From Lepidodermella squamata (taxonomy: Eukaryota > Animalia > Gastrotricha): a stretch of 64,000 nucleotides of DNA. The DNA is taken from NCBI GenBank assembly GCA_047495785.1, contig JBLDXI010000046.1, forward strand, positions 806,001 through 870,000. The letters run 5' to 3'. Each line of letters begins with the position of its first letter. Position 1 is the first letter of the stretch. The notes under the pieces are model-generated. The model was not told the origin of the DNA, ran no database searches, and worked only from the letters and a program-made list of their open reading frames with translations. A program made the position numbers and the translations under genes. This document shows positions 11,398 to 49,947 of this stretch, piece after piece.

Positions 11398-14300
11398 ATG
11401 TTATTTTTTGCTCTAATTGCATTCGCATGTGCCGCCTCCTGTTCAGCAGATGAAGCAGCGGAGGAACCCGATATAAATGAGGTATGCTGATGACTTCGAA
11501 CTACGAATTTACTCTTTTCTTGTTTCCTTAAAAGATCAGGAACTTTATAAACCAAGCACGGCTGAAGGGATTAGCAAAATCCTATGCTGAGGTTTGTTCA
11601 CTTCGTATTCTCAAGTTGGCTGTTGCTTGACACCCCAATGCTATTTTCCAGAGCGATGTAGATGAAACTTCCCCGGAACTTATGACATCTGGCACTGTTA
11701 CAAAATGGACTCTACCCATACGCTTTTACCTCACGGCGAAATTGGGTACTTTTTTTGAAGCTTTTCCAGCATTTTCTGTAGTAGGCTATTTCATTGCGTA
11801 GAAAGGGACGCTGTTGCCAAGGCGAATGTACTTGCCGCTATCAAAATGTGGTCTGATCCGACTTGCGTCTCGTTCGAACAAGTGTTCACGCCTCCACTAA
11901 CGGGCAATGCGTTGACTTTCACTCGAGGCACAACGTAATACAGGAAATTTCATTAATCATATTTCGAAGGTTTTGATTTGTTCTTTTAGTGGTGAATGCT
12001 GGTCACAGATTGGCATGGTTGAAGATTACGCTCAAATGGTTCTTATCACAAATGAGTGTGCACATGTTAGCTAAACTCTGGACGATTAACGTATAAGAGA
12101 ACTACTGTTTTCCAACAGGATGTCGGACTTATAGCTCATGAGATTGGTCACGCTCTTGGCTTTGTAATTGCTCATACCTTCAGCTTACACGTTTCTAAAC
12201 TTTTCTCCCACAGCCTGACGAGCACCAGCGAGGCGACCGCGATAACTTCGTCAAGATCATCTCGGAAAGAATTATACCGTAACAGCGTACATGGTTAAAT
12301 TTATCATAAAATGTATTCAAATTTCAGAGGCCGCGCAGCCGCCAGTTTCGCCATCTCACCGGATGATAAGAGGAGCGATACAACTTACGACTTTGGCTCT
12401 GTGATGCATCCGCCCTTATCCTATCTGAGCGATGATGGTTCCCGTACTATCGAACCTATCGATAAGCACTACTTGGCCACTGTCACAGCTAATAAGACGC
12501 TGACCTACATCGACATTTACCGTGTACTTATGCTGTACTGTCCAAGTAAGCCAACTAACACTATATTCTAAGATAGGAGCAATAAGGGACATTTGAAGTT
12601 TAAACAACAAGAAAATGATGCATTAGGATGGGTTTCTTTAACAAAATTTCATAGCTACATTTAAGGTACCTGTTTAGCACGGGGGAACCCCCTTCCCAGC
12701 TTGCGAGCAGGTGGAGCAACGGAATAGCACAATTCGACCTTCAGATTATTGCAGGCAAGATCCAACCAGAGAATTGTTGTTTTTTTCCTAGACGCGTGTC
12801 AATCGAGCAGTGTGAAATGCGAGCTAGGTGTATTTGATCCTAAGAACTGCGACCGTTGTAGGTGCACTGAGGGCGCAACTGGCGTAACGTGTGAAGATGG
12901 GATATTTGATAGTCCTGCTGCTTGCGGTCCAACTTACATCACGGCTACCGGGTGCGAAACAAGTTACATCAATATTCCAGGCAACATTCCGGCTGGGACG
13001 ATTTGTTACTACTGGGCGTCAGTAACTAAAGTAAGGATAATATTTTTAGCCTACCAATAGTTTATCATGCCCTTATAACCATGATAAATTTTTCACCATT
13101 CGATAGATCTCGTGTCCGGTAAACTTTGCTGAAATTCTCGTTAGAATCGGAATTTTCGATTAGAATCGTTAGAATTCGGTGTTTTTGCCAAATCGCATGC
13201 AGCATTTTCACCACCAGTTTATCTGCTCGGATCCGATTCTAACGAGAATTACAGCTAAGTTAACCGCAGACCAGATCTATCGAATGGTGAAACCCGCTTC
13301 AAAAAAATCCTCATGGTTATTGTCCGCACTTTATTTCCAGCTATGATCTAAAGAACGCGTTCATCACAATCACTATTTTAGGTGGAAGGCGGCTTAGTGT
13401 TGAGCTTCGAATCGATTCCAATGCAAACCGAATCTGGAACTGATGAGGAATGCACCGGTGGTTCGTTCAATCATTTATTTGGCGTAATTTTTTACAGTCC
13501 GTTTTTTTAATTAAGATGAGTCATGTGACAATGGCGATTTCATCGAATTCCATTACAGCATAAGCCCGAAACTATTCACCACGGGCCCAAGGTAGGGCAA
13601 AGTTGATTTTTCGCATGAATTTTAACAAATCGCCGCAGAGCTTGCCGTTGCGGAGTAACAGCAGGCCGATTTTTCAAGGAAGATATTGGTGTCGCTCTGG
13701 TGAGGCTGGTTAAAAAAACCTCAGATACGTGGAAACCGTTCAGAATCGCCGTCTTTCCAACTTGTGGTGGTGTGAGTGCCAACGCGCTCAGCGAGGAGTG
13801 CTCCTTCGTCCCGAATAACTACGACTACATTGGCAAGAATAACCGCCTTCCTACCGGGGGCAAATGCGATTTATGGACCAATCAAAACTACTCACCGAAC
13901 GACTTCCCAGAAGCATCAATCGAGGCCGTCTCGAATTATTGCCGCAATCCTCGAGCAGAAAAGGCCGCGGCATTTTGTCCGCAATCAGGGACCCTAGATT
14001 CATGTCGAGATGTAGCCGTGTGCAGTAAGCTGGAATGATGCCATCTTTCAATACTACACGATGACTTTGTTTACATGTATAGCCGCTTACACTCGATGTG
14101 TTCCTGCTGACGACTCGATCGGGTACTGCGAGCTGCCAGGCCAATGCGCAATCAACGATCCGAAAGTTGAGGTAAAGAAATCCACCAGTCTCTGTGTAGC
14201 GAATTTAGAACCCAATGTTAACCCTTTCATGGCGGAATTAGTTATAAGCGGGAGAAACAATATTTGACAGCAATTCGAGATTTTGAAATCCGATTGTCGA

Positions 14301-15473
14301 ATTTCGAATCAAAATTTCAATCTCAGGTTGACTATTTTCAAATTGCTAGTATGTCCCGAACAAGAAAGATAACGCTGTCCTAATAGTCTCAAAACCTCGT
14401 AGCCAACATCGAAAAGCAATTTTCCTTAAATGGGCGAAAATTGAATTCGTCAAATTCAATTTTCTGCGAATTTTTAAAGTCGAAATTCCGAAATCGTCTT
14501 TCACGCCGTGAAAGGGTTAATAGCTTTTTGACAACGATGATATGCGGGGTGACTACAACTCCAGGGTGTCTAAAAGAAGGCATATCTCTCCGCACTGGAA
14601 ATTCGGTGAAAACGGATAAATAATCAATGTCTCGGCGGCTTGGTGATGGATGACCTGTTATGCGGGACTGTCACCAAACTGCACGAATTTTCACCTGTGA
14701 CCTAACGGTATACATTTCTAGCTAGATCTCATCACGCTGATGAACTTTTTCTTTGAGAGCGGCTTCGTAGCTATCACGGCTCTCGAGATAACCGCTCAGG
14801 TGTGACGCCAGGTTAGGTCACGTGACAAACTTGACACTGGAATTTCACCATAACTGTATATGATAAAATTATGGGGTTTTCGAATTTTCGCTCCCAAATG
14901 TTATCTCTATCGAAATAATGCGTGTCGATAGGGAAAGAAAAATAGACGATTTTTCTCGAAATTACCTATTTTTCTAATTGCTTAGCTGCAGCCGTTCGCT
15001 CCTACCCAAACCAGACTGATTTATCCGAGCCGCAATGACTGCTTCGCTGGTGTGAGTCATTTGACTTCGTTTTCACTCGAATTCTTGATGGCCTATTGTT
15101 TTAAGGGGGCTAAATGCTGCTACTCGAAATCAACTGGCGCATATGCTTACGGTGTTGTCGAGCGAGGCTGTGCCGATGGCTTCGCGACACTGATGACTTA
15201 CTCGAGCAATACTAATTTCTTCATCAACTACCAGTATGTCATCAGAACCTGCAAAGATGGGGTGCGATTTGAATCTATAGCAATTTCAAGCTATATGTAT
15301 TAAAATGTTGATAATAGGTGGCTTTGGAGCGTTGCCGCGATTCATCAAACAGCCTCAAAACATGCGCCCTAGAATCCCAGCCTTGTCCAGATGGCCTGGT
15401 GAAGCAGTCTAATAAAGTCATCTTTCCATCTTTTGCTACCTGCGTCGATCCCGCCATAGAGCACCCGAATTAA
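11398..15473 (+). CDS. Astacin-like metalloprotease A1 (SP-astacin-EGF-CUB-kringle-Cys-rich C-terminal domain), multi-exon
   Basis: SP MLFFALIAFACAASCSA. KWTLPIRFY, MWSDPTCVSFEQ, CWSQIG, HEIGHALGF|PDEHQRGDRD, YDFGSVMHP, EGF CELGVFDPKNCDRCRC, CUB-like exons, kringle NYCRNP. Stop TAA 15471-15473. Confidence 0.85.
13075..13320. mobile_element. Foldback/MITE-like insertion in an A1 intron
   Basis: Long imperfect inverted repeat (ataaccatga/tcatggttat, tttcaccattcgatagatct/agatctatcgaatggtgaaa, aattctcgttagaatcgga/tccgattctaacgagaatt). Absent from the paralogous A2 intron. Confidence 0.75.
14222..14516. mobile_element. piggyBac-like non-autonomous element (TTAA TSD)
   Basis: TTAA|CCCTTTCA...TGAAAGGG|TTAA. 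The paralogous A2 site ('aatgttaatagct', ~23420) has a single TTAA, i.e. an empty site. One more terminus of the same family lies at ~16251-16295. Confidence 0.85.
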
Positions 15474-16020
15474 ACCGAGCCGTGGGAAAGCTCGTGTGGT
15501 TGAGCCCATTTTCGGTGGCATGAACTAATTTTGGACAAAAGAATATTATATTATGCAAGCGTCTGTGTAATCAAATACGTCAAAAATCTATTATATTGCT
15601 GCTAAAATCGAACAATAAAATCGATATCAAATAAAAACCAGTGTTCAATTTCTCAAAATTTTGAAGTAAAATTTGAAACAAGAAAACTGGCGAATATATA
15701 TCATATGACCTGAAACAATAAGTGAAAACAATAGCTCACAAACGAATTCCTTTTTTCCTCGTCGGTATGTAATTTTTTTTTCTCGGTCAAGTCGTCGAAG
15801 AAACCCTTGACGCTCTCCCAAACATCGATAATTATATCGACTTGGCTAAGCCGTCAAGCTGAATGTGTGACCTATAAATTAAGCTTTAAGGCAAAAAATG
15901 CCCTGATGCTTGCCAGCAATTAGGTCAAATATTATGACTAATGCCCGCATTTGGCCCAGAAAACATGAACGGCTTTAGCAGCCAATTATCGGCCTCTTTA
16001 GAGTAATAAATAAATGTGAT

Positions 16021-16097
16021 GGCAACATGGTGCAGTTGCTATTAAACCGGCCAGTTCAACAGGCGGACGAGGTTCGAGCCCCGTCAAAGTTGGCCAT
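16021..16097 (+). other. tRNA-derived (SINE-like) sequence
   Basis: B-box GGTTCGAGCCC, GGCAAC/GTTGGCC acceptor-like pairing, followed by a T run; no clean cloverleaf. Confidence 0.35.
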
Positions 16098-20050: not shown

Positions 20051-23000
20051 ATGATATTCTTTGCTATAATTGCATTCACATGTGCTGCCTCCTGTTCAGC
20101 AGATGAAGCAGTGGAGGAACTCAATATTAATGAGGTATGTTGATGAATTTCAACTATGAGTTAAATTTAATCTTGTTTCCTTAAAAGATCAGGAACTTCA
20201 TAAACCAAGCACGGCTAAAGGGTTTAGCAAAATCTAATGCCGAAGTTTGTTCTCTGCGTTTTCTCAAGTTGGATTTTGCTTGACACCAGAATGCTATTTT
20301 CTAGAGCGATGTAGATGAAACGTCCCCGGAACTTATGACATCTGGCACTGTTACAAAATGGACTCTACCTATACGCTTTTACTTCACAGCGAAATTGGGC
20401 AATTTTTGAAGCTATTTCTGCATACTCAGTAATAGTAATTTGCGTTTGTAGAAGCAGATGCTGATGTCAAGGCGAATGTACTAGCCGCCATCAAAATGTG
20501 GTCTGATCCAACTTGCGTCTCGTTCGAACAAGTGTTTACGCCTCCCGAAACGGGCAATGCTTTGACTTTCACTCGAGGCACATCGTATGAAAGAAAAATG
20601 CATTAACCATAGCAGATTTCGAAGGTTTTTATGTCTGCTATATAGTGGCGAATGCTGGTCAAAGATTGGCATGGTTGAAGATTACGCTCAAATGGTTCTT
20701 ATCACAAATGCGTGTGCATATGTTAGCTAAACTCTGGGCCACTAACGTATGAGAGAACTACTGTTTTCTAACAGGATGTCGGACTTATAGCTCATGAGAT
20801 TGGTCATGCTCTCGGCTTTGTAATATCTTATACCTTCTGCTTGTACGCTTTTCAACTTTTCTTCCACAGCCTGACGAACACCGGCGAGGCGACCGCGATA
20901 ACTTTGTGAAGATCAACTGGGAAAACGTTCAACAGTATAACACCGTAAATGGTGCAATTTATAGGAAAATATATTATTCTCATTTCAGAAGCCGCGCTGC
21001 AAGTTTTGACATCTCGCCAGATGATAAGAGGAGCGATACAACTTACGACTTTGGCTCTATGATGCATCCGCCCTTATCCTATCTGAGCAGAGATGGTTCC
21101 CGTACTATCGAACCTATCGATAAGCACTACTTGTCCACTGTCACAGCTAATAAGACGCTGAGCTACATCGACGTTTACCGCGTGCTTTCGCTGTATTGTC
21201 CAAGTAAGCCAACTAATAACCTACTAACATTATATTACAAGATGCAGTACCGATGGGGGTAATAAAGGACATATGGAGCTAAAAACAAGTTGAAAATTGA
21301 AGGTTAGATTTCCAATGGGAGAAAGGTGAACCGATACCGCCGAGGCCAGTCTATGATGACCTCTATAAGTGGATAGCGCCTGAGAAAATTTAGGTAAGTG
21401 GTGGGGAAACCTTGGCTAAATGCGGTTGAAAGGACGGAAACAAAAAATGAATCATTTTCATGGTGGATTATGACTGTTTACAAGGCAGCGTTAGGAACAG
21501 GTCCGGTCGACCGTTCCCGGTCCGTTCCCGTTCTAGGTCCGGTATCGGTCTCAAAAACGCCATCGGTAGACTGGGAAAAGTTCAAGTTTAAACTTAGCAG
21601 GGTGGGCGTGGAAAAATGGAAAAATCAGATTTTGTTGTTTTCGTGATTTTCCTGACTGTCAGCATTAGTGCGGCAGTCAAAAGTATCGAATGCGGTTGGG
21701 CTGGTTCATGACCTCCTAACATTTTACTGAGTCTTAGAAGCCTCCCTACATCCCTACTAGAAGCCTTGATCATATTTTTAGGCGAGTTGGGAAATTTTAT
21801 GCGTTTGGTGTCATGTTTTCTCTATTTTCATGCGATTTAAAAATGGCAGTTCTAAAACCGGAGTTCCCGTCCCGGTCCAGTTTGACTTCCATCGTTCGCA
21901 GGTTAGGTATATATCGATCTGCAAAACCTTACCCGTTTCCAACACTGTTTCAAGGCTCCTTTTGAATATAAATCATCCTTGGATTAGAAGAAAAGTTATT
22001 GGATCTAAGGCACCTTTAAGGTAATGGGGTATCCCCTGCCTCTGAAAAGCCGAAACCAAGACTGAGGGGACCGACATTTTTAGGCCGAAAATAACTGTAA
22101 GTACCACCCAGCCGGAGGACCCTAATTTGCACGCTGCCGGTTACTGGGTTTTTAGCAGCAAGTAAATTGAAAGCTAGGATAGCTTCAAGATGGCCAAACT
22201 AGGAAATATTTTCTTAATATTAGTAGGATCCGGGTTTCAGATTGTTGCAAGCTAGACCCAACCAGAAAAGCACGCTTTGGTTTCCGCTGTTGATTTTTCT
22301 TATAGACGCGTGTCCATCGAGCGGCGTCAGATGCCAACTGGGCGTATTCGATCCCAAGAACTGCAGCCGTTGTAGGTGCGTCGAGGGCGCAATTGGCGCA
22401 GCGTGTGACGACGGAATATATGATAGTCCTGCTGCATGTGGTCAAACTTATATCCAGGCTAGCCCGTGCGAAACAAGTTACATCAATATCCCAGGCAATA
22501 TTCCGGCTGGGACAACTTGTTTCTACTGGGCTGTAAAGGTTGTTTTCGGGCAATGATCTCATGAATAAGTTCATCAATTCACCTCGCACTTTTACAGGGT
22601 GAGGACGGCGGCTTCGTGCTCGGCTTCGATTCGATCCCAATGCAACCCGAATCTGAAGCTGATCCGGGCTGCAGCGATGGTTCGTTCAGTCATTTATTTT
22701 AAAGAATTTCTGCAGCGCGGTTTTATGAATTTAGATGAATCATGTGACAATGGCGATTACATCGAATTCCAATACAGCGTAAGCCCGAGAATATTCACCA
22801 CTGGACCAAGGTAGGAAATACTCGATTCATCGATAAATTTGAAACCTTTGTCGCAGAGCTTGCCGTTGCGGAGTAACAGCGGGACGTTTTTTTAAGGAAG
22901 ATTATATAAATGTCGCTCTGGTGAGACTGGTTAAGAAAACCGCGGATACGTGGAAACCGTTCAGAATCGCCGTCTTCCCAACATGCGGTGGCGTGAGTGT

Positions 23001-24392
23001 CAACGCGTTAAGCGAGGAATGCTCCTTCGTCCCGAATAACTACGACTACATTGGCAAAATGCACCAACTTGACTCGGGGGCTCCTTGCAATCCATGGACC
23101 AATCAAAATTACTCACCTAACGACTTCCCAGAAGCATCAATCGCAGCTGTCTCAAATTATTGCCGCAACCCTCGAGCAGATAAGGCCAGAGCATTTTGTC
23201 CGAGATCAGGTCAATTGATGTTTTGTGGACATGTAGACGAGTGCAGTAAGGCTGAATGGCATCTTTCAATGATACACGATGAATTTGATTCCATGTATAG
23301 CCGCTTATACTCGTTGTGTTCCTGCTGACGACTCAACTGGATACTGCGAGCTGCCAGGCCAATGTGCCATCAACGATCCGAAAGTCGAGGTAAAGAAATC
23401 CAGCAGTTTCTGTGCAGCGAATGTTAATAGCTATTTCGACAACCCTATGCAGGGTGACTACAACCCCAGGGTGTCTAAAAGAAGGCATATCTCCGCACAA
23501 GGGAAACTCGCGGTGAAAACGGATAAATAACCAGTGTCTCGGCGGCTTGGTGATGACCTGTTATACGGGACTGTCACCAAACTGCACTGAATCGAATTTG
23601 CACGAATTTACACCTGTGACCTAACGGAATACATTTCTAGTTAAATCTCATCGCGCTGATGAACTTATTCTTTGAGAGCGGCTTCCCAGCTATCACCGTT
23701 GTAGAGATAACCGCTCAGGTGTGACGCCAGGTTAGGTCACGTGACCAACTTTACACTGTAATTTCTCCGTAACCGTAAGTAATAAAAATATGGGGTTTTC
23801 GAATTCTCGCTCCCCATTTTTTCTCTATCGGTGTAGTGCGTGTCAATTTGTAGGTCATTTTCTCATAATTACCTGATTTTTTAATTGCTTATAGCTGCAG
23901 CCGTTCGCTCCTACCCAAACCAGATTGATTTATCCGAGCCGCGATGATTGTTTTGCTGGAGTGAGTCATTTTGACTTTGTTTTCTCGGAACCTATAATAT
24001 GGCTCATTCTTTTAAGGGGGCTAAATGCTGCTACTCGAAATCAACTGGCGCTTATGCTTACGGTGTTGTCGAGCGAAACTGTGCCAATGGCTTCGAGGCA
24101 ATGTTGTCTTACTCGAGTGATGAGAATTTCTTCGTCAACTACCAGTATATCATCAGAACCTGCAAAGATGGGGTGCGATTTAAGTACATGATATTTATTT
24201 GAATTTAATGAATTTATTTGATAGGTGGCTTTGGAGCGTTGCCGCGATTCGTCAAACAGCCTCAAAACATGCGCATTAGAATCTGAATCTTGTCCAGCTG
24301 GGCTGACGAAGCAGGCTAATAAAGTCATCTTTTCATCTTTTGCAATGTGCGTCGATCCCGCCGTAGAGCAGCCGCCTTACACCGAACCTTAG
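20051..24392 (+). CDS. Astacin-like metalloprotease A2 (long form), multi-exon
   Basis: Paralogue of A1: HEIGHALGF|PDEHRRGDRD, YDFGSMMHP, EGF, CUB, kringle NYCRNP, C-terminal Cys domain. Stop TAG 24390-24392. Confidence 0.8.
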
Positions 24393-32600: not shown

Positions 32601-33391
32601 TTCTGGTTTACGGTTCGCCTTTCGCCTTACCCAAATTCTCCAAAAAGATAAAAAATCCCTTTTTGCAATTTGCAAGTAAAAATGTTTACCAATCCGAGAG
32701 CATGGCCGATTTCATGGGCGATTTTTCCAGGGCTCTGAAAAATAGACATTTCTAAATTCACCACGTCTAATGAGGTTTGTTACAAGACAAACATCTATAC
32801 ATTCAGGCGTTAACAGAATCATCTGAGCTCCATTGCCAATCATGCCAACCTTCGACCAACACCGCCCGCTAAATGATGAAAAATTTAATTAAACGAATTA
32901 CAAATGCTTTGAGACTCACGATGTCGCAGATGCGAAAGCGATAGCGTTGCCGGAATTGGGCGGTGAGAAAACTTCCTTGAATTCGACACATGTTTCAGTA
33001 GTCCACATAGATATTGCCTTCCGAACGTTGGCTACATGAGTAGGGTTGGACTCTGGAAAATATCCGAATAACGTTATCTTATTATTTGTTGAGACATAAG
33101 CATATACTGAGGTAAGCCGACATGTAGTAACGGATAGGAAGCTTCCAAGGGGTGACTGTGTTGCCATCCTTGAGTTTCGGCGCCTCGAGTTCAGAATCGA
33201 CATCAGCCTAAATTGAACAATAAGTCACAAAATGTCTTGAACGGGTGATATAAAACCTGGCTTTGAACGGCTTTGCTTTGTGCCCGAACTGCATTATCGA
33301 GGAATTGGTGAAATAAATCGTAAATCGAGCTTTTGCCATAAGCAGAGACAAGGCAAAAGCATATGAAAAGGCTCAATGTAAATACCTTCAT
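29694..33391 (-). CDS. Astacin-like metalloprotease A3 (long form), multi-exon
   Basis: SP MKVFTLSLFICFCLVSAYG. MWTTETCVEFKE, HEIGHALGL|PDEHQRQDRD, YDYGSIMHP, kringle AYCRNP, C-terminal YQ/FQYVQQICRYG...CPSGL...FAKCILP*. Confidence 0.85.
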
Positions 33392-36800: not shown

Positions 36801-37471
36801 TTTCCAGGGCTCTGAAATAATAGATATAACAAATTCTTTACGGCAGTATTGGTATTTGTCCATCACAAACATTTTGACATTCTGGCGTTATCAGAATCAT
36901 TTGAGCCACTTTGCCAACCATGCCAACTTTCGACCAACAACGCCCCCTAAATTAGAAGAAAATATATCGAAAATAAATTAACAATGGGATTTTTTGACTC
37001 ACGATGTCCCAAGTGCGAAAGTAATTGCGTTGCCAAAATTTGGCGGCGTGAAAACCTCCTTGAATTCAACACAAGTTTCAGCAGTCCACATAGCGATCGC
37101 CTTTTGAACATTGTCAGCAAATTTGGCTTGAGACTCTGGTATAAAGACTAGGTATTGTCGATTTTAATTGTTGAGAGATAAGCTAACTCAAGAAATTTGA
37201 TATGTAGTAACGGATAGGAAGCTTCCAAGGGGTGATTGTGTTGCCATCCATGAGTTTCGGCGCCTCGAGTTCAGAATCGGCATCAGCCTAACAAGCAATA
37301 AATAAGGAACATGTTATCAAATTGGTGATAGAAAACCTGGCTTTGAAAGGCTTTGCTTTGTGCCCGAACTGCGTTATCAAGGAATTTTTGGTATAAATCG
37401 TAAGTTGAGCTTTTGCCATTAGCGGGGAAAAGCCAAAAGCATACGATAAGGCTCAATGTAAATAACTTCAT
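33884..37471 (-). CDS. Astacin-like metalloprotease A4 (long form), tandem paralogue of A3
   Basis: SP MKLFTLSLIVCFWLFPANG. HEIGHALGL|PDEHQRSDRD, YDYGSIMHP, kringle SYCRNP, ends FAKCILP*. Confidence 0.85.
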
Positions 37472-38507: not shown

Positions 38508-39896
38508 TTACGAATTAGGACAAACAGGCAGAGGACCGCAAGGCACGGCCGTTCCCGATACCGGGCAGAAAGCAGAGGACATCGCTGCTTCAGGGTTGCG
38601 GCAGTAATTAGAAGCAGCCTCAAGTGAAGCTTCCGGAAATTGGATCGCGCTGTAGCTCCCTTGATTAATCCATGGCTCGCAAGTTGACCCGGTCATAGCA
38701 CTCTGCTCTGTGCCTTCGTAATCGTAGTTGTTCGGCGTGAAGGAACAGGTCTTGGGCAGCTCGTTTCCATGCTGGCCATTACACATGGCATGGACGTAGA
38801 CTTTAATGGTCGGCCATGTATCGGCAGTATTTTTCACAAGCCTCACGAAAGCGGCATTGTTACCATTCTTGAAGACGCGACCAGCTGTTATCCCGCAACG
38901 GCAAGCCCTTAGATTGCCAAAAATGAGGAGAAGCACATCATTTTATTTATTGTAACTGACCTTGGTCCAGATGTATAAAGGAGATAAGAGTCGCCACTAA
39001 TGAAATCGATGAAATCCCCGATATCGCAGGATTCAGCTGCAACATGTCGTGTGATTTATTAATTTGATTGAAACAAATCATGCAACTAACTATCACAGTC
39101 CTGGTCGGCTTTCATGGGAGGCGAATCGAAAGCCATAACAAACCCGCCTTCTTCTTGCTGGAACAACCATTACCCAGCTAATCATCCACTGGTAAAAATA
39201 ATGATTAATACATAAGTACCATAACAACCCAATAATGGCAGGTCGTCCCTGCCGGGACGTTGCCAGGGATTTCAAAGGAGCCATTCTGGCACGCGGTCAT
39301 GTAGGTGATACTTTGACCAATAGCTGGTCGCACGTCGCGCCAGACGTGCCCGGTACGCAGATGCAACGATCGCAATTTTTCGGATCAAATACGCCGTAGA
39401 TACATCTGACAGTACTTGACTGGCACGCACCTAATTCAAGAACACAGAAATATCAATTGCATCGGAAGTCGGAGTCTTGTTAAATCTAATGGTGTATCCT
39501 CAATTTTAGGTTTGCGAAAATTCAAACCCATGGGCATTAAAATTCCTCAAGTAGCTTACTTGGACAATAGAGAGAAAGCACACGGTACTTGTCGACCCAG
39601 GTCAGCGTCTTGTTCTTTTGCGTGATGGTTGACAAGTAATGCGGTTCTAGAGGTTCGATGGTGCGCTGTTCGTTTTTGCTTAGATACGTAGGGCTCGGAT
39701 GCATGATTGAGGCAAAGTCGTAACCAGTATCGCTCCTTTTATCATCCGATGAGATTGCAAAACTGGCAGCGCGACCGCTGAAAGATATCAATATATTCCA
39801 AATTAAAAAACAAATAAGCAGTGTGGGTTACGGTGCAATGTTGTCAGAATTGATCTTCACCCATTGGTAACGGTCACCTCGCTGATGTTCGTCAGG
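38508..39896 (-). pseudogene. Astacin-like A5, 5'-truncated (starts at the PDE exon), short form ending after the kringle
   Basis: PDEHQRGDRY, YDFASIMHP, EGF exon with a frameshifting deletion, kringle NYCRNPEA...CPNS*. Confidence 0.75.
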
Positions 39897-40230: not shown

Positions 40231-40806
40231 TTAGGAGTTTCCACAATCAGGCATAGGACCGCAACGCCTCGCAATTTGCCCTATCGAGCAAACAGGAACG
40301 TCCGAAGCTGCTTTAGGGTTGCGGCAATAATTAGAAGCAGCCTCGAGTGAACCATCCGGAAAATCGAGCGCAGTGAAATTCGATTGGCTAGTCCATGCCT
40401 CGCAAGTATCCCCATTCGCAGCATTCTGCTGTGTGCCTTCGTAATCGTAGTAGCTCGGCGTGAAGGAACAGCTCTTGCTAAGGTTGTTACCATGCTGGCC
40501 AGTACACATGGAATGGACGAATACTTTGACGGTCGGCCACGTATCGGCCGTCCTTTTCACCAGCCTCATCAGGCTGCGGATAGAAAAATGATTATCATTC
40601 ATTTAATCAGTTGAAAAATCAATTACAAATCCGAGTGCGTGACCAATTTCATGAGCTATCAACCCAATATCCTGAAATAAAAAATGCCTAAAAAATCTAT
40701 CGATGAAAGTGCCGAAGCGAGAATCGTACATATGAACACTCTTTCGTGATCAAAACATGTTGAGCGTAATCTTCCACCATACCGATTTTTGACCAACATT
40801 CGCCGC
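40231..40806 (-). pseudogene. Astacin-like A6, 5'-truncated and internally deleted
   Basis: CWSKIG exon and DIGLIAHEIGHALGF exon (40671-40627), then acceptor + CCTGATGAG (PDE) fused out of frame to the kringle exon. Confidence 0.75.
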
Positions 40807-42032
40807 TGAAAAATGACCAGATAAGTCGAATGTTTACATATACCCCGAGGCATAGTAGTATCTACCGATTGTCAGGGCTCCATTGAAATACCAACCCCCC
40901 ACGTTGCGAAGGTTATATTTGGGAAAATAAAAGATCCAACTTGATTTTCCATCAGAAATTGAGCTTTTCGCCATTTTTGGATCAAACGCTCATTCTGTCG
41001 ATTTTCGTTTTGATTTTCACTCTCGCTTTTTTTGCCGCCAGATATTCGCGTCAGACTGGCACGCTGCTACGTTGAAGAATCGCACCACGGCTCTAGCTAT
41101 TTGAACTGTTGGCTCATCAAATCAACCTGGCGAGTGAATTTGGCTGATGTCAACTAGTTCGCCGATCTGGTCATTGTCGATCTCAAGCTTTCGGCGGTTT
41201 CGATCCTGTTCGAGGAAGCGTGTCGTCGAACCAGTTCGACCCAGGAACGAAGGCTGATGGATTGTTACGGAATACAAGACGAAAACGGCGTCGTTTTGGC
41301 AATTTCCAGGATACAAGAGGAATGCGATTTTCTCAACATTGAGCTGCTCGGATTTCGCAATTGTCCCGGTGGAGTTCTGGGTTTTATCGACATTGTGGCC
41401 GAACACTGCTCGATTTTCTCGGTAGCAGGGGTGAATGTTGCCAGATTTTCGAGCCACACCAGCTTTTCAATGAGATTGTTTGATTTTGAGTTTTAGACCG
41501 GCATCTAGGATTTTTATGCTACGGTCATACGGCAGCACGACAGAAAAGTACATTCACGACTACGGTAGAAATTGTTTTGAATTTGATGAGGACATCTTTA
41601 ATACTGCCACAGTAAGACGTCGCAAAATATCCTTTATGAACCTGTAACAATTAAGGAATCCTTAACGGTGTTGAGGGCCCGCTGAAAATGCCCTAGGCCG
41701 TAGCGAAGCGAAGCCCGAGGGTATTTTCAAGGGCTGAAATCGAGTTTATGCCGTTCCTGTTCCAACATGGTTGGTTATTTTTTAAAGAAAAACTTATTTT
41801 CCGCTCGAAAACTGGATAAAATGCCCTCACACAGTTTTAGCGTTCAAAAAAAATGACTTTTGTTAAAATGCTTTCTTTGGTTCAAATCTTTGCTTAGCTA
41901 GTCTAATGGAGCCTGGTTCGTCCAGTAAATCAGTGATTTGGATTTCAACAGAAATTAAAAATAAAAGATCCACCTTAAACGGAATCACCGGGCGGAAACT
42001 CCGGGCGGAATTAAGCAATCTTGGATGGTTCA

Positions 42033-42712: not shown

Positions 42713-44821
42713 TTATCCAGTCGATGCTGAACAATTAAGAATCGCCCCAGCACACGAAATCGAATTTCCACTAGCGTCGACACAGAAAGGGCTACTACTC
42801 GACGCCTTCGGATTTCGGCAGTAGTTGCTAGCGCGTTCGATAGACCCTTCGGGAAAGTCAAACGGCTTAAATTCTGGCCTGGATGACCATGACCTACAGT
42901 CCAGCTGGGTAGCAGCCCCCTCATAGTCGTATTGATTGCTGGTGAACGCACACTCCTTGCCGAGAGATGTACCGGTTCTGCCGCCACACATGCCATAGGC
43001 GGCGAGTCGGCTTGGCATCCACGTGTCACTGGTTACTTTCACAATTTTAACCACCAGCCAGTTCCAAGTGGTTGTGCTTTTGAAAACTCGCCCCGAGCTA
43101 ACAGAACACCGGCACACTCTGCAACAAATGTGTTATAGAAAAAGCTATAGTAAGCATTCATGGCGACCAACCTTGGACCAGCAGCAAAACCTATCCGAGT
43201 ATCGTCGATGAATTCCATGTAATCGCCCGATTCACAAGAGGAAGCTATCGGATAATCGATGAATTGATGTATTAAATTGTGATCTACGGCTTACCAGAAT
43301 CGTCGCAAGGTTGGTTGTTGTTCATAGGAACTGAATCGAAACCAACAACCAGCCCACTGCCGTCGGCCTAGAGTTGAAAAATTGGTATGTAATTATTACG
43401 ATCCACAATCCTCTCACCGTGTATATCCAGCGGTAACAAGTCGTACCAGCTGGGATGTTTGTTGGAATATCGAAAAAGGCTGGCGTGCATGGGTCAACAT
43501 AGTTGTAACTTGGCCCGCAGATTGCTTCATCAGAGAAAATGGATTGGTCGCAATTTGGACCGAAGTAGCCTTCGCCGCACATGCAGTTGGCGCAATCATT
43601 AGGATTGAAAACACCAACAAGGCACGCAGGATGAGTAGGACACTTCTCTATGTTTTTTCCAAACACCATGAAATGATAAATTGTAATGCCAAAACATTGT
43701 CCCACCTTGACAATACAGCGAGATGATTCGATACTTGTCAGTGAACGACAGAGTTGGTTTAACCGCGTTGACGCTGTAGATATAGTGTGGATCTTTCGGC
43801 TCAATTGTTCGAGAACCACCATCCTTCGAACGGAAGTTCAATTTCTTGTGCATGATTGAACCGAAATCATACGGCATATCGACGCGGTTATCAGGGGTGA
43901 TGATCTCAAAGTCTGCCTCACGGCCGCTGGAAAAAATTAAACTTTTTCCATGCGAGGAATTAGTCTAGCAAAACAAAGCTCACGATTCAACACGGTCCAA
44001 TACGATGTCAACCCAGTCGTCGCGATCTGCTCTTTGATGCTCGTCGGGCTGTTACAAGTAAACTTCTTATTAGTTAGGAGGTGTGTAGGTAAATCATACC
44101 AATCCTAGAGCGTGACCGATCTCGTGAGCAATCAGGCCCGGATCCTAGGTAAAGGCAGACTATTGAGAGGATTTAAAAAATTCGAAATCATACATTAGAG
44201 CATTCTTCCGTTATCAGTATCATTTGCGCATAATTGCCAACCATGCCAATTTTCGACCAGCATTCCCAGCTAACCATTTCCGAAATGTTGGAAGATCAAT
44301 TGATTCAATTGCATAATGCTTACCCTGTCCCTAGAGCAAACGTGATAGCGTTGCCAGCAACTGGTGGCGTGAAAACCTCCTCAAATCGAACACACGTTGC
44401 GGCAGACCACATGTTAATTGCGGCAAGGACGTTAGCTGCTATCGCAGTGTCACTTTCTAGAAACAAAATTACTCAATGCGAAATATCAAGATGACCAGGC
44501 AAAATTACTCAGTTTGCTAGTCATGTAGTAGCGAATAGGCAGCGTCCATTTGACGAAAGGCGTTGAGGTTTGCAGCCGAGGCGCATCGTTACTTAGCTCG
44601 GCATCTCCCTTGAATGAATCTGCCACAAATGTAGCGGAAAATTCAGCTCTTCGCTTGATGTGATTTTGTAATATATCTTGTAGCTAAAGAAATCATTTCA
44701 ATATTCAATACAAGTTTTGAGCTAATTGAAAACAAAACCTCACCTCAACTTCAGGCGTTGAATGGACTTGGCATGTGAACATGCAAACAGACGTGAGCCA
44801 TAATAATACGATCGGTTGCAT
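42713..44821 (-). CDS. Astacin-like metalloprotease A7 (short form: SP-astacin-EGF-CUB-kringle)
   Basis: SP MQPIVLLWLTSVCMFTCQVHS. KWTLPIRYY, MWSAATCVRFEE, HEIGHALGL|PDEHQRADRD, YDFGSIMHK, EGF CLVGVFNPNDCANCMCGEGYFGPNC, kringle NYCRNP. Confidence 0.8.
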
Positions 44822-45944: not shown

Positions 45945-47065
45945 TTACGCGAACAACGATGGATTGATGCACTTGGCAAAAGAGGTGTATTGGGCATTTT
46001 CCGGGCTCTGTGATGGAAAAGTATGTATCAACATAATTTCGAATTGCAGAATCACTTCAACTTACCGTGCCATCCGGGCAGCCAGTCATAGCAAATTGGC
46101 ACGAATTATGTTGTTCGACGCATCAAGACAACGCACCAGTTGTACCTAACATTAGAATTTAGGCATAAATCGTTTTATCAACCCTGAAATTCACCTCATT
46201 TTTACAAATCCGGTTGATATACTGGTAGTTCGAGAAAAAATTCGGATCAACGGCGTATGTCAAAACGTGGTCGAACATTTCAGCACAGTCCCGCTCGGCA
46301 ACACCATAAGCGTAGGCATCAGTAAACTTCGAATAACAGCATTTAGCTGCCTAGAAAAAATGGCAGGCAAAATCATGGTTTCGGGGCGTTTTCGTGATTT
46401 TTACTTACACCAGAAAATCAATTGTCTCGACTTGAATACAGCAACCTGGTTTGGTTAGGATCGAAAGGTTGCAACTAAATTATATGACCATATTGAGTAG
46501 AAATTTAATATGGGATCATATATGGGAAATACCTCGGTCATTTGATCACCGCACTGATCTTTTTCTTGACAGTACCCAGGTTCAGTCGCATCGGCTGGGA
46601 TGCAGCGAGTATAGGCGGCTGGGTAAAAGTAGACAAATCATCGAAATTTGTGAGGAGCATACAACAAGCCGGGATCATTCCGCAAGGCACATTTCCGGAA
46701 ATGTGCTTCCGCAAGACACGAGGGTACCCGATACTGGGCACGAGGCGAATTCCCTCTCTGCTCTGGGGTTGCGGCAGTAATTCGCAGCTTCAGCCAAATC
46801 GTCGATACTGGCCAAATCGTGTTTTGACTGCTCCATGGTTGGCTGGGTGTCCCGTTTTCTGTGCGGTTTTCCGTGCCTTCGTAATCGTAATTAGTCGCAG
46901 TGAAGGAGCATTTTTTGCTCAACAAATTGCCATTCTGACCACCGCACATTGAATAGAAAGCTAGTTGAGTCCAGGTGTCGGAAATTTTCTTCACAAGAGT
47001 CGCGAAGGCAAGTTGATAGCCAGTTGTAATCATACGACCTGCAGTTATCCCGCATAAGCACGCCC
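45945..47065 (-). pseudogene. Astacin-like A8, 3' fragment only (CUB end, kringle, C-terminal Cys domain) with frameshifts
   Basis: ACLCGITAGR...LVKKISDTW, NYDYEG, frameshifted NYCRNP, last exon FAKCINPSLFA*. Confidence 0.7.
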
Positions 47066-47223
47066 TGTGAATATGCAAATGTCAAGGCGTATTCAAGCTG
47101 AGAGACTTTAGCAGCGACGTTGGCCCGGTTGCTAGCCAGCGATCAGCGCCATTGGCATCATGGAACCATTCAGTCCCAAATTTAAGCTGCCGAAGCAAAA
47201 GATTCAAGGCAATACAATCTTTT

Positions 47224-47299
47224 GTAGGATACGGGTACCGATCTCGTTGCCTCTCGCATGTTGAGCGAGCGCTATTTTGAGCTATTTGAGCTAATCCCC
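47224..47299 (-). pseudogene. tRNA-Ala(AGC)-derived pseudogene
   Basis: Reverse complement GGGGATTAGCTCAAAT...GCGCTCGCTCAACATGCGAGAGG...ATCGGTACCCGTATCCT, with a duplicated D-arm segment and a mutated anticodon loop. Confidence 0.7.
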
Positions 47300-47375
47300 A
47301 TGAAGTTGAGTCAATATTTATTTAACAAAGGCATTCTCAACAAGAACGTAAAACTAGCAGTAAAATGTTGAAACC

Positions 47376-47460
47376 TGGCGTCCTTCGGGAGACTCGAACC
47401 TCAGAAACTGCGATAAACTGCTCACGGGAGATCAGGGTTCGATTCCCTGCCAAGGAGCCA
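47376..47460. pseudogene. Two back-to-back tRNA 3'-half fragments, each ending in encoded CCA (right one tRNA-Asp-like)
   Basis: Minus strand GGTTCGAGTCTCCCGAAGGACGCCA; plus strand CACGGGAGATCAGGGTTCGATTCCCTGCCAAGGAGCCA followed by a T run. Confidence 0.5.
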
Positions 47461-47514
47461 GCTTTTTCCTTCATCTTAAAGCTGTGCTCTGTGTATTCGC
47501 CAAAAATGTACAAC

Positions 47515-47587
47515 CGCCCGATGTGGGGCTCGAACCCACGACCCTGGGATTAAGAGTCCCATGCTCTACCGACTGAGCTAACCGGGC
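47515..47587 (-). tRNA. tRNA-Lys(CTT)
   Basis: GCCCGGTTAGCTCAGTCGGTAGAGCATGGGACTCTTAATCCCAGGGTCGTGGGTTCGAGCCCCACATCGGGCG, 73 nt, canonical cloverleaf, T5 terminator ~10 nt downstream. Confidence 0.97.
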
Positions 47588-48082
47588 TGAGACTGCAGCA
47601 TTTTATATTTCCTCACTGGTATTACTTCACTGGTAAAAGCAATCGCAGAAAAAATTAATGGTCCGTGTTACGTGCTATTTGAACCAACCAATCACAGACT
47701 AGAAACCACCCGACCAATCAAATAATTGTGGATTCACTGGTTCCACTAAGAAGCGCTGGAGTGTCATGTTGAGGAATTCAGCATCGAACGCGAGCGCCAA
47801 ACCTTGCATATTCTGAAATGAGACGACAAAAAGTCCAAGTCTGCTACAGAAAATGCTGGCTAACAGGAAAAAAATGAGATAAATGTTAAATAGTTTTTTA
47901 CTACCGAGGCTTGAATACTAGCTTTTCGAGTCATGCCAAGCAAAAATAATGAGGCAAAATAACTTTTCCATTATATTTAGCATAAGATTTTACATTAAAT
48001 TCGGTAAGTGATGCATTATAGTTAAGTATAGTTCGTAGACCATCTTTCTTCATCGCCACTTCAGACAGGTTTGTGAGGCAAT

Positions 48083-49947
48083 TTAGCCCGGGCGGCATAG
48101 AGGAATTTGATTGCACTGCCTTGCGATTCCACCTATCGGGCAAAAAGCAGCCTCAAGCGCTGCTTCAGGGTTGCGGCAATAATTAGAAGCGGCCTCTAGC
48201 GACGCTTCTGGAAGTTGGAGGGCGGTAAAATTTGATTGACTTGTCCACTGCTCGCAAGGTGCCCCGTTCCTAGCGCGATTTTCTGTGCCCTCGTAGTCGT
48301 AGTTGCTCTCCGTGAAGGCACAGCTCTTGGGAAGGTCATTACCATGCTGGCCATCACACATGGCGCGGATGAAAACTTTGACTGCAGGCCATGTATCGGC
48401 GGTTTTCTTGACTAACCTCACGATGGCGAGTCGATAACCATTCTTGAAAAAGCGGCCAGCTGTGACCCCGCAACGGCAAGCCCTTATTGATAAAAATTGA
48501 GTTGGAATAAACGAATTAATTCAAAGCTTCTAACCTTGGCCCAGTTGAATACATCAGCTCACCGCCATCAATGAAATCGATGAAATCAACGTCCTCGCAT
48601 GACGATCCCGCTAAAAACGATTTGAGATTAAAATTGAGATAACACAAGCTATTAAAAACTAACTATTATTACAGTTCTGGTCGGCTTTCATCGGCGGCGA
48701 GTCGAACGCCATAGCAAATCCGCCGGTGCCTTGCTGCGGAAAAGAGGTTGTTACAGATTATCAATCACCCGAGCAAAAGTGTTCTATTCAAACCGAAACA
48801 ATCCAATAATGACATATCGTCCCAGCCGGTACGTTGCCAGGAATTTCAAAGGAAGAAGTATCGCACGACGGGACATTTCTGAAACTTTCACCACAAACAG
48901 GGTCGTTTACATTTAGAACTTGGTCACACGCCGCGCCAGCCGTAGCCGCGATGCAGATGCAACGATCGCAGTTGTTCGGATCAAATATGCCATATATGCA
49001 TTCCACAGTTCTCGACGGGCATCCATCTAAATTAGGAAAGCATAAGTACTAATAGGTGACATTCACATTCAATAGACTCAGAACCGAGGAAATAATCGAA
49101 ACAACTTAGAATTTCAGATAAGTAGAGGAGTCGAACTGATACAATCAAGTTCAAGATAACGCTAAATCCGAGCTATTCAACAACGCTGACGATATGGATG
49201 AGAGAGCGAAGTACGGCTAGGGATGCTGGGGATCATTCCTACCATTTCAATCGGCACGCAAGGTTAACTCAGAAAAAGACCAAGGGTAGACCCTTTAAGG
49301 TGATTTTCTCATCCTAACTATTTCTGCTGTCCTAATTCGTCCTCTGATGGATAGAGCCAACATTGCTGTGGGGGTACGGAGCTTTCGTTCTTTAAGTTAA
49401 ATTGCTTACTTGGGCAATACATCGCAGTTATACGGGCTCTGTCGTCGAAAGTCAGCGTCTTGTTTCGAGTGATTGTTGACAAGTAATGCAGGTCGACAGG
49501 TTCAATGGTGCACTTTCCGTTTTTGCTTAGATACGTGGCGCTCGGATGCATGATAGAGGCAAAGTCGTAATAGCTATTGATCCTCTTATCATCTGGCGAG
49601 ATGGCGAAATCGGCAGAGCGGCCGCTGAAATAAGCATTTTCAGATTTCACATTGACTACAACAATAAATAGCCGTTACGGTTTAATGTTTTCTGTATTGA
49701 TCTTAACCCATCTGTCACGGTCACCTCGCTGGTGCTCGTCAGGCTGTGAGGAAAAATTTCAATTTTTAATGCAATTATCGTTAATAATAAATTACAAGAC
49801 CAAGAGCGTGGCCAATTTCATGAGCTATCAACCCAACATCCTGCGATCAAAAAAAAAAGTTGAGCCCTAGAATTCAATATCATCACATCTTACATTTGCG
49901 CACTCATCCGTGATAAGAACAAGCTGAGCGTAATCTTCGACCATGCC
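48083..49947 (-). pseudogene. Astacin-like A9 (short form), 5' part replaced at the LTR junction
   Basis: Exon GMVEDYAQLVLITDECAN is cut at 49947. HEIGHALGL|PDEHQRGDRD, YDFASIMHP, EGF, CUB and kringle exons are otherwise open. Confidence 0.8.

What the first reader, a model, noticed from the sequence alone, without database searches (positions are those of the whole stretch)
11398..49947. Expanded astacin subfamily with an Asp third zinc ligand (HExxHxxGxxD) and no Met-turn tyrosine
Seen: eight copies (A1-A7, A9) have CC[TC]-GA[CT]-GA[AG] (P-D-E) opening the exon after HEIGHALG[F/L], e.g. GAC at 12217-12219. This gives HEIGHALG[FL]PDEH[QR]RxDR. The register is fixed by the downstream ExxRxDR signature, so a mis-called splice cannot restore His. 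The Met-turn reads SVMHP/SMMHP/SIMHP/SIMHK in the seven copies that retain it. Established: astacins (M12A) use HExxHxxGxxHE..RxDRD and SxMHY, with the Tyr acting as 'tyrosine switch'. Asp as third ligand is known from bacterial metzincins such as snapalysin (M7) and immune inhibitor A (M6, GLPD), and Pro at that Met-turn position is MMP/ADAM-like. Inference: the catalytic Glu and both first His are conserved across clearly diverged paralogues, so this looks like a selected, re-engineered active site rather than decay. It may be an undescribed astacin class.
Basis: partly seen in the sequence, partly recalled or inferred. Interest (0 to 1): 0.88.

Follow-up and report, generated by a model that had tools for sequence, protein, structure and literature searches.

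The report
Astacin proteases with an aspartate zinc ligand
A tandem family of secreted astacin-type zinc proteases in an unannotated animal genome has swapped one of its three zinc-holding histidines for aspartate and lost the usual helper tyrosine, yet is transcribed and kept by selection, so it probably still binds zinc; whether it cuts protein is untested.

Summary
Seven exon pairs encode HEIGHALG[FL] | intron | PDEH[QR]RxDR. An eighth "PDE" exon opening, at 40573, is a deletion remnant.

Alignment to solved astacins puts the Asp on zinc ligand His102. It also puts SxMH[P/K] on SxMHY.

- **Gene model:** A1 is a 16-exon, 671-aa gene with signal peptide, propeptide, astacin, EGF/CUB-like, kringle-like and Cys-rich parts.
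- **Transcription:** Spliced contigs of a transcriptome-like run support eight A1 introns. They leave the key intron uncovered and cover the PDEH exon.
- **Copy state:** A1-A4 look intact. A6 is intact up to the kringle. A5, A7 and A8 are broken.
- **Selection:** Catalytic-domain dN/dS is 0.19-0.34. The zinc block is the longest invariant stretch of the domain.
- **Relatives:** None of the 150 closest representative proteins pairs an intact HExxH with Asp.
- **Recurrence:** A DNA-pattern scan found about six other unannotated astacin lineages with that pairing, in metagenomes and one Archangium genome. Most also lack the tyrosine.

The open-access papers I searched do not describe such an astacin. 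My verdict is a new variant of a known kind, not unique to this genome. It probably has a snapalysin-like His2-Asp zinc site. Catalysis is untested. Another note of this scan (s1-430966) reports a similar pair elsewhere in this genome.

The parts
11398..15473 (+). A1, a complete 16-exon gene of 671 aa. Order of parts: signal peptide, short propeptide, astacin-like catalytic domain, EGF/CUB-like region, kringle-like domain, Cys-rich tail.
   Evidence: Hand-built model reproduced by my spliced aligner. All introns are GT-AG. Contigs of run X1 join 11934>11990, 12065>12119, 12545>12792, 13030>13637 (one search sets that exon start at 13639), 14024>14083, 14169>14984, 15051>15106 and 15260>15317.
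12119..12163 (+). A1 exon 6, encoding DVGLIAHEIGHALGF. It holds the first two zinc-binding His, the catalytic Glu and the Gly turn.
   Evidence: A GTAATT donor follows directly.
12214..12278 (+). A1 exon 7, encoding PDEHQRGDRDNFVKIISERII. The Asp codon GAC at 12217-12219 is in the place of the third zinc-binding His. The family-specific Glu and RxDRD follow it.
   Evidence: The PDB alignment puts the Glu on astacin Glu103. X1 depth is 0 at 12173 and 12197 inside the intron, and 31.5 at 12225 in the exon.
12398..12412 (+). A1 Met-turn, SVMHP. Pro stands where astacins have the zinc-binding 'switch' Tyr.
   Evidence: Exon 8 matches Pfam Astacin above its cut-off. It aligns to SLMHY of 3lqb.
20051..24374 (+). 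A2, an intact paralogue of about 669 aa with the same 16-exon layout. It reads HEIGHALGF|PDEHRRGDRD and SMMHP.
   Evidence: Spliced alignment, no stops. It is 88% identical to A1 in the catalytic domain.
29697..33391 (-). A3, an apparently intact paralogue. It reads HEIGHALGL|PDEHQRQDRD and SIMHP.
   Evidence: The two micro-exons the aligner placed are artefacts. One junction that I checked by hand has a simple GT-AG solution, 32196/32067.
34004..37471 (-). A4, an apparently intact paralogue. It reads HEIGHALGL|PDEHQRSDRD and SIMHP. Its signal-peptide exon is 37471-37337.
40565..40807 (-). A5a, a remnant made of exon 5, exon 6 (HEIGHALGF) and the first 9 nt of exon 7 (P-D-E at 40573-40565), joined to the middle of a kringle exon.
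   Evidence: The 730-nt gap after exon 6 matches kringle exons at 38845-38303 and 48420-48118 at 73-75% identity.
38520..39896 (-). A5b, a partial copy that starts at exon 7. It reads PDEHQRGDRYQW and SIMHP. Stops appear in the CUB-like part of the forced model, and no N-terminal exons were found.
42728..44626 (-). A6, a paralogue that is open from the propeptide to the kringle. It reads HEIGHALGL|PDEHQRADRD and SIMHK. The first exon and the C-terminal tail were not found.
46107..49947 (-). A7, a 5'-truncated copy. It reads HEIGHALGL|PDEHQRGDRD and SIMHP. It is cut inside exon 5 at 49947/49948 and has an in-frame stop in the Cys-rich tail.
   Evidence: A 180-nt direct repeat (49948-50127 = 59299-59478, 99%) begins at the break.
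62356..63514 (-). It reads NEIGHALGF, has in-frame stops, lacks a PDEH exon and keeps only part of exon 8.

Best explanation
The window holds a birth-and-death tandem array of one lineage-specific clade of secreted, multidomain astacin-family (M12A) proteins. Their parts, in order, are a signal peptide, a short propeptide with an Asp-switch-like motif, the catalytic domain, an EGF/CUB-like region, a kringle-like domain and a Cys-rich tail.

In the common ancestor of the clade the third zinc-binding His (His102 in astacin numbering) became Asp. The fifth ligand, the 'switch' Tyr of the Met-turn, was also lost and is now Pro or Lys. All other parts of the metal and catalytic apparatus were kept.

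**Shown here**
- The substitutions and their register.
- Monophyly of the clade.
- Purifying selection on the catalytic domain.
- Transcription and splicing of A1.

**Inferred**
- The domain still binds zinc through His-His-Asp plus a water activated by the HExxH Glu. This would be a four-coordinate site like that of snapalysin-type metzincins, which use the same HExxHxxGxxD spacing.
- The proteins act as latent, propeptide-controlled endopeptidases, with kinetics or metal and pH preferences that probably differ from canonical astacins.
For: - **Family:** Pfam Astacin matches exon 8 in 7 of 7 copies.
- **Register:** It is fixed by alignment to 1ast and 3lqb.
- **Clade:** The copies form one clade (SH-aLRT 100) on a long stem of 0.7-0.84 changes per site.
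- **Selection:** dN/dS in the catalytic domain is 0.34 (A1/A2), 0.24 (A3/A4), 0.29 (A5/A7) and 0.19 (A1/A5). dS is saturated between subclades, so the Asp has been held for a long time.
- **Synonymous change:** Codons of HEIGHALG.PDEH differ synonymously between copies.
- **Conservation:** 72 of 192 columns are invariant. All 15 metal, catalytic and structural positions that I listed are among them: H, E, H, G, D, E, R, D, R, M, H and four Cys. That is about 4e-7 if columns were independent.
- **Propeptide:** It keeps an aspartate-switch-like motif (AESDV, QADV, YADA, FKGDA) that would be pointless without a metal (the canonical motif is described in PMC9848320).
- **Expression:** A1 is spliced and expressed.
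- **Chemistry:** HEXXHXXGXXD is an established zinc site (PMC3890501).
- **Recurrence:** Asp at this position with an intact HExxH recurs in other astacin domains, namely L004, L009, L010, L020, L040 and L066. This suggests the fold tolerates it.
Against: - No biochemical or structural evidence exists. I could not model the catalytic domain, because a spliced protein has no single reference.
- The switch Tyr matters for catalysis in canonical astacins, and its loss lowers the expected activity.
- According to other notes of this scan, which I did not check, the same genome carries many catalytically dead astacin arrays. Loss of function is therefore common in this lineage.
- The nearest database relatives by exon 8 include many dead Strongyloides and Parastrongyloides astacins.
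- The long stem branch could reflect a change of function.
- Three of the eight copies are broken.
- Direct junction reads across the key intron were not among the joints listed.
Confidence: 0.6

Rival explanations
1. These are pseudoproteases. The His-to-Asp change and the loss of Tyr abolished catalysis. The domain is kept by selection as a binding, decoy or scaffold module, with or without a bound metal, and is targeted by its CUB/kringle/Cys-rich parts.
For: - Purifying selection is equally expected for a non-catalytic binding protein.
- Dead astacin arrays are reported elsewhere in this genome (unchecked notes).
- Among the closest 150 representatives, every protein that lacks the third His also lacks the Tyr, and nearly all of them are clearly dead.
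- The clade sits on a long stem branch.
Against: - Dead astacins among the hits have lost the HExxH His or Glu as well. Here H, E, H, G, D, E, the RxDR residues, M and an Asp-switch-like propeptide motif are all invariant although dS is saturated.
- Asp is a competent zinc ligand at exactly this spacing (PMC3890501).
- The same pairing of Asp with an intact HExxH recurs independently.
Confidence: 0.3
2. This is a decaying family. The Asp is one of many degenerative changes in pseudogenes that are not under selection.
For: A5a and A5b are fragments, A7 is truncated by an insertion and has a stop, and A8 is degenerate.
Against: - A1-A4 have open full-length models with GT-AG introns.
- dN/dS is well below 1.
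- A1 is transcribed and spliced.
- The active-site block is the most conserved part of the domain.
Confidence: 0.03
3. It is a gene-model artefact. A different splice or a hidden micro-exon supplies a His, so the mature protein has the canonical HExxHxxGxxH.
For: The motif is split by an intron in every copy. The junction itself was not among the joints printed.
Against: - The Asp codon directly precedes the Glu codon with no AG in between, so any exon that contains ExxRxDR also contains the Asp.
- The intron lengths differ (50, 50, 145, 110, 51 and 52 nt) while both exon ends are conserved.
- X1 depth is zero at both intron places that one search lists (12173 and 12197). The mean depth of the 12166-12301 bin (14.7) fits coverage of the 65-nt exon alone.
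Confidence: 0.02

Closest known systems
Canonical astacins (MEROPS M12A, Pfam PF01400), e.g. crayfish astacin 1AST and zebrafish hatching enzyme 3LQB
   Same: Both have the Pfam Astacin domain. Both have HExxHxxG, the family-specific Glu, RxDRD, the Met-turn Met-His, four conserved Cys, a signal peptide, a propeptide with an Asp-switch-like motif, and EGF/CUB-type C-terminal modules.
   Different: The third zinc ligand is Asp instead of His. The Met-turn Tyr is replaced by Pro or Lys. A kringle-like domain and a Cys-rich tail are added. The clade sits on a long stem branch with no close relative among 1.84 billion representative proteins.
Metzincins with an Asp third ligand: snapalysin (M7) and immune inhibitor A (M6)
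   Same: They share the metal-binding spacing HExxHxxGxxD (PMC3890501). From memory, they also share the local G-L-P-D sequence.
   Different: There is no sequence homology beyond the motif. The window proteins match only Pfam Astacin and keep astacin-specific features (E-xx-RxDRD, SxMH). The resemblance is a convergence of the site, not membership.
Catalytically degenerate nematode astacins (expansions in Strongyloides and Parastrongyloides, e.g. P0028, P0017, P0002)
   Same: They are the best-scoring relatives of exon 8. They have similar Met-turn surroundings (MH-PL-YL-S/T..G..T.EP), have lost the Tyr, and have a non-His residue at the third-ligand position. P0017 and P0021 even have Asp there.
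   Different: Those proteins have also lost the HExxH His and/or Glu. The window clade keeps them all. They do not group with the window clade on the tree.
Unannotated astacin domains with HExxHxxGxxDE from metagenomes (L004, L009, L010, L020, L040) and an Archangium sp. MAG (L066)
   Same: They have an intact HExxH, Asp at the third-ligand position, and Glu-xx-RxDR. Pfam Astacin scores are 41-144 bits. Four of six lineages also lack the Tyr: SIMQH, SIMHT, SVMTH and SIMHV.
   Different: They are at most about 40% identical to anything in the tree and lie far from the window clade. They have different domain contexts, some are bacterial, and none forms a known expanded array.

Membership tests
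Astacin family (MEROPS M12A / Pfam PF01400) | Significant match to the Astacin domain profile | tested here: met
   Exon 8 alone scores 25.8 bits against a cut-off of 22.5. All 7 copies match, best E-value 3e-13. PDB matches are to astacins only.
Astacin family (MEROPS M12A / Pfam PF01400) | Three-histidine zinc motif HExxHxxGxxH | tested here: not met
   The first two His, the Glu and the Gly are present. The third His is Asp (GAC) in all seven copies, aligned to His102 of 1ast.
Astacin family (MEROPS M12A / Pfam PF01400) | Family-specific Glu after the third ligand, followed by xxRxDRD | tested here: met
   The sequence is D-E-H-[QR]-R-x-D-R-D in six copies. A5b has RGDRY.
Astacin family (MEROPS M12A / Pfam PF01400) | Met-turn SxMHY, whose Tyr is the fifth zinc ligand and 'tyrosine switch' | tested here: not met
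   Ser, Met and His are kept. The Tyr position is Pro in six copies and Lys in A6.
Astacin family (MEROPS M12A / Pfam PF01400) | Four conserved Cys of the two catalytic-domain disulfides | tested here: met
   The Cys in TCV, xCW, ECx and LYC are invariant wherever the exon is present. Disulfide pairing is inferred from the alignment with canonical astacins.
Astacin family (MEROPS M12A / Pfam PF01400) | Secreted zymogen with an aspartate-switch propeptide (FxGD) | tested here: inconclusive
   Hydrophobic N-terminal exons are present in A1-A4. AESDV, QADV, YADA and FKGDA lie 17-18 residues before the conserved Trp. The resemblance is by motif only.
Astacin family (MEROPS M12A / Pfam PF01400) | Zinc-dependent endopeptidase activity | not testable with these tools
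   This needs recombinant protein.
Asp-zincin-type metal site (snapalysin M7 / InhA M6) | HExxHxxGxxD zinc-binding motif | tested here: met
   HEIGHALG[FL]PD is present in seven exon pairs. The motif definition is taken from PMC3890501.
Asp-zincin-type metal site (snapalysin M7 / InhA M6) | Sequence homology of the domain to M7 or M6 | tested here: not met
   Only Pfam Astacin and astacin PDB chains are matched.
Catalytically dead astacin homologues (pseudoproteases) | Loss of the HExxH histidines and/or the catalytic Glu | tested here: not met
   H, E and H are invariant in seven copies. Only the degenerate A8 reads NEIGH.

The most novel reading that the evidence does not exclude
Replacing the third His with Asp and dropping the Met-turn Tyr may be a coupled, repeatedly evolved way of rebuilding the astacin metal site. 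One anionic ligand would replace another, turning a five-coordinate His3-Tyr-water site into a four-coordinate His2-Asp-water site. The result would be active proteases with a changed metal preference, pH optimum or inhibitor sensitivity. This genome would hold the first expanded animal family of that type.
Probability: 0.3. Interest if true: 0.7.

Novelty: new variant of a known kind. Interest (0 to 1): 0.5.

Why it matters
Astacins are defined by a three-histidine plus tyrosine zinc site. Surveys and annotation pipelines keep only sequences with that motif and class the rest as non-peptidase homologues (the review PMC9848320 applies exactly this filter).

Here a selected, expressed and expanded clade combines an otherwise complete catalytic apparatus with an Asp ligand. 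The same pairing also appears sporadically in bacteria and in environmental contigs that look eukaryotic. Together these suggest that the astacin fold can run on a snapalysin-like His2-Asp site.

If that is confirmed, three things follow:
- The definition of the family would widen.
- The census of "dead" astacins in helminths and other invertebrates would change.
- There would be a natural system for studying how metzincin metal sites evolve.

If the proteins prove inactive, they would be a well-conserved example of a metal-site-retaining pseudoprotease.

Tried and rejected
- **Search for close relatives.** The profile search of exon 8 against 1.84 billion representatives gave no close relative. 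The best real hit scores 82 bits, and P0001 is a repeat artefact. Two word-index searches with the A2 exon7-intron-exon8 open frame found nothing. Their length filter (61-270 aa) excludes full-length relatives, so this blank is weak.
- **Scaffolded alignment.** I tried to build a full-length query by aligning the separate exons to a canonical astacin. MAFFT misaligned the fragments, so I dropped it.
- **Structure prediction.** AlphaFold of the kringle exon gave pLDDT 35 and was unusable. I did not model the catalytic domain, because a spliced protein has no single reference and I did not type long sequences.
- **Organism.** The Ty3/gypsy pol search gave at most 57% identity, to unnamed environmental contigs. 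The organism remains unidentified. I rejected "nematode" as a firm call. It rests only on the best astacin hits being nematode proteins, and those dominate the databases.
- **Literature.** Five searches and five papers gave no description of an astacin with HExxHxxGxxD. Subscription papers are not covered.
- **Pattern-scan noise.** Most of the 72 DNA-pattern hits are chance frames in GC-rich DNA, or M6-like GLPDEY proteins. I discarded them.
- **Compensating Tyr.** I rejected the idea that the Tyr 4-5 residues after the Met-turn (PxxSY) compensates for the lost switch Tyr. It aligns with the canonical A-F-S position.
Full report
**What is in the sequence**

The window is eukaryotic DNA with short GT-AG introns of about 50-60 nt. 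A six-frame scan finds HEIGHALG[FL] seven times, each followed directly by a GT donor. It also finds PDEH[QR]RxDR seven times, each preceded directly by an AG acceptor.

The codon pattern CC[TC]GA[CT]GA[AG] occurs behind an acceptor at eight places. The eighth site, at 40573, reads PDEAGEK. The DNA after its first 9 nt matches the middle of kringle exons of neighbouring copies at 73-75% identity. It is therefore the scar of an internal deletion in a dead copy.

The Met-turns read SVMHP, SMMHP, SIMHP (four copies) and SIMHK.

**Register**

The Asp codon directly precedes the Glu codon of ExxRxDR, with no AG between them. Any exon that carries the astacin signature Glu therefore also carries the Asp.

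I also aligned the A2 open frame that runs through intron 7 to the solved structures. The Glu falls on Glu103 of crayfish astacin (1ast) and on the equivalent residue of hatching enzymes. SMMHP falls on SLMHY of 3lqb. The Asp thus occupies the place of the third zinc ligand, His102, and the Pro occupies the place of the switch Tyr.

**Gene models and transcription**

I built A1 by hand and reproduced it with a spliced aligner that I wrote. Extended with transcript evidence, it is a 16-exon gene of 671 aa.

- Its parts, in order, are a signal peptide, a short propeptide, the catalytic domain, a Cys-rich EGF/CUB-like region, a kringle-like domain and a Cys-rich tail.
- Pfam Kringle matches the exon-12 piece in 7 of 7 copies, best E-value 1e-8, though below the gathering score in A1.
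- Pfam Astacin matches exon 8 in all seven copies.

Contigs of run X1 behave like transcripts.

- They skip eight A1 introns at GT..AG: 11934>11990, 12065>12119, 12545>12792, 13030>13637, 14024>14083, 14169>14984, 15051>15106 and 15260>15317. The 12545>12792 and 13030>13637 joins are read from a single contig (record 3); one search places that exon start at 13639.
- They have depth 0 at 12173 and 12197, inside the key intron, and depth 31.5 at 12225, in the PDEH exon.
- The mean depth of the 12166-12301 bin (14.7) is what coverage of the 65-nt exon alone would give.

The exon 6/7 joint itself was not among the joints printed, so its support is indirect.

**State of the copies**

- A1, A2, A3 and A4 have open full-length models with signal-peptide exons.
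- A6 is open from the propeptide to the kringle.
- What I first called A5 is two fragments. A5a has exons 5 and 6 plus the 9-nt remnant. A5b starts at exon 7.
- A7 is cut inside exon 5 at 49947/49948. A 180-nt direct repeat begins there, and its partner lies 9.35 kb away. A7 also has an in-frame stop further on.
- A8 (62.3-63.5 kb) is degenerate and reads NEIGHALGF.

The array is therefore a birth-and-death family. It has four or five apparently working genes and three or four wrecks, interspersed with transposons.

**Selection**

Nei-Gojobori dN/dS in the catalytic domain is 0.34 (A1/A2), 0.24 (A3/A4), 0.29 (A5/A7) and 0.19-0.29 (A1 or A2 against A5 or A7). Between the three subclades dS is saturated.

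The codons of HEIGHALG.PDEH differ synonymously between copies: CAT/CAC, GAG/GAA, ATT/ATC, GGT/GGC/GGA and CTT/CTC/CTA. Catalytic domains are 50-88% identical. Of 192 columns, 72 are invariant, and IAHEIGHALG-PDEH is the longest invariant block.

All 15 positions that I listed in advance as metal-binding, catalytic or structural are invariant. These are H, E, H, G, D, E, R, D, R, M, H and four Cys. The chance of this is about 4e-7 if columns were independent.

The propeptides keep a motif that resembles the astacin aspartate switch. They read AESDV, QADV, YADA and FKGDA, against the canonical FxGD described in PMC9848320.

**Relatives**

On a tree with the best-covered astacin domains of the database hits, the seven copies form one clade (SH-aLRT 100) on a stem of 0.7-0.84 changes per site. 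They have no close sister.

The profile of exon 8, searched against 1.84 billion representative proteins, gave at best 82 bits.

- The top hits are nematode astacins from Parastrongyloides, Strongyloides, Plectus and Panagrolaimus, plus some unnamed environmental proteins.
- None of the 150 listed proteins combines an intact HExxH with Asp.
- The two with Asp at that position have lost HExxH.

The organism is not identified.

**Is the motif known or common?**

In the open-access library I found no paper that describes an astacin with HExxHxxGxxD. The main review explicitly kept only sequences with the intact motif.

The variant does exist elsewhere, however. I scanned two collections with a DNA pattern for HExxHxxGxxDExxRxDR.

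- In 241 million metagenome records it gave 44 loci. Seven of these have an astacin-type motif, and Pfam confirmed the six I scanned as Astacin domains (41-144 bits).
- Among them is L004, a complete 347-aa secreted protein with an EGDI switch, HELMHALGFFDEHNRPDRD and the Met-turn SIMQH.
- In 185,579 prokaryotic genomes it gave one clear case, in an Archangium sp. MAG. That protein reads HELMHALGFYDERQRPDRD with SIMHV and scores 100 bits.

These sequences are far from the window clade on the tree. The Asp therefore arose more than once. The reconstruction gives at least four changes of state, but support among the long branches is weak.

Four of six such lineages also lack the Met-turn Tyr, against 1 of about 57 canonical rows. 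Fisher's p is 1e-4, but the rows are not phylogenetically independent. This hints that the two changes are coupled.

**How it most likely works**

- **Shown:** this is an expressed, selected astacin clade with Asp in the third-ligand position and no switch Tyr.
- **Inferred:** the domain binds zinc through His, His and Asp, plus a water polarised by the HExxH Glu. HEXXHXXGXXD metallopeptidases of the snapalysin type do the same (PMC3890501). The proteins would be secreted as latent zymogens and would cleave extracellular substrates selected by the CUB/kringle/Cys-rich modules.

I give about 0.6 to a metal-binding enzyme that is probably active. I give about 0.3 to a conserved non-catalytic module. 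A few percent remain for decay or a model artefact.

Three points argue against activity:
- The Tyr contributes to catalysis in canonical astacins (my own knowledge).
- By unchecked notes of this scan, this genome is rich in dead astacins.
- I have no structural model.

**Comparison and novelty**

The proteins are homologous to astacins, but they fail two of the family's defining sequence features. They work like Asp-ligand metzincins, if they work at all, without being related to them.

I class this as a new variant of a known kind. It is undescribed in the literature I could search, and it is not unique to this genome. Another note of this scan (s1-430966) reports a further Asp-ligand astacin pair on another piece of the same genome. 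I could not inspect it.

For the broken copies I describe only where they are broken.

Noticed in passing
window 53691-59194: A Ty3/gypsy-type LTR retrotransposon with two 178-nt LTRs that are 100% identical (53691-53868 and 59017-59194). It has an open 1230-aa protease-RT-RNaseH-integrase frame (53984-57676, - strand) and a gag-like frame with a zinc knuckle (57607-58938). It explains the GC jump to 52-57% and looks like a recent insertion.
   Followed up: partly
window 49948-50127 and 59299-59478: A 180-190-nt direct repeat (98-99% identical) lies 9.35 kb apart and brackets the TE-rich block. The left copy starts exactly where astacin copy A7 is truncated inside exon 5. I did not settle whether it is an outer LTR pair or a segmental duplication.
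   Followed up: partly
window 59474-60842: Two overlapping open frames on the - strand. The first (59474-60202) matches the MULE transposase domain (Pfam PF10551, E 2e-10); the second (60087-60842) has no Pfam match. This is probably a DNA-transposon remnant.
   Followed up: no
window 14172-14985 (A1 intron 13): The 814-nt intron is filled with very high-copy short repeats. DNA-run depth there reaches 4,000-11,700, against about 100 on the flanks, and many rearranged joints appear. This suggests MITE-like elements.
   Followed up: no
L004:49-1089 (- strand), a JGI metagenome contig: A complete 347-aa secreted astacin (Pfam 144 bits) with an EGDI aspartate switch, HELMHALGFFDEHNRPDRD and the Met-turn SIMQH. 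A His stands where the Tyr normally is. It is the best available natural, intron-free Asp-ligand astacin for modelling or expression.
   Followed up: partly
L066:319-954 (- strand), Archangium sp. MAG: A myxobacterial astacin domain (Pfam 100 bits) with HELMHALGFYDERQRPDRD and the Met-turn SIMHV. It shows the same double change (Asp ligand, no Tyr) in a bacterium.
   Followed up: partly
window 15106-15261 and equivalents in A2-A4 and A7: The Cys-rich tail after the kringle gives a faint match to the snake three-finger toxin fold (Pfam PF21947, 14 bits, below the cut-off). It may be a Ly6/uPAR-like module and was not examined further.
   Followed up: no
P0060 (JGI metagenome protein, 825 aa): An environmental astacin with EGF, a clear kringle (NYCRNPDAD) and CUB, whose first zinc-binding His is Val (VEIGH) and whose Met-turn is SIMHF. 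It groups weakly next to the window clade and shares the rare astacin-kringle architecture.
   Followed up: no
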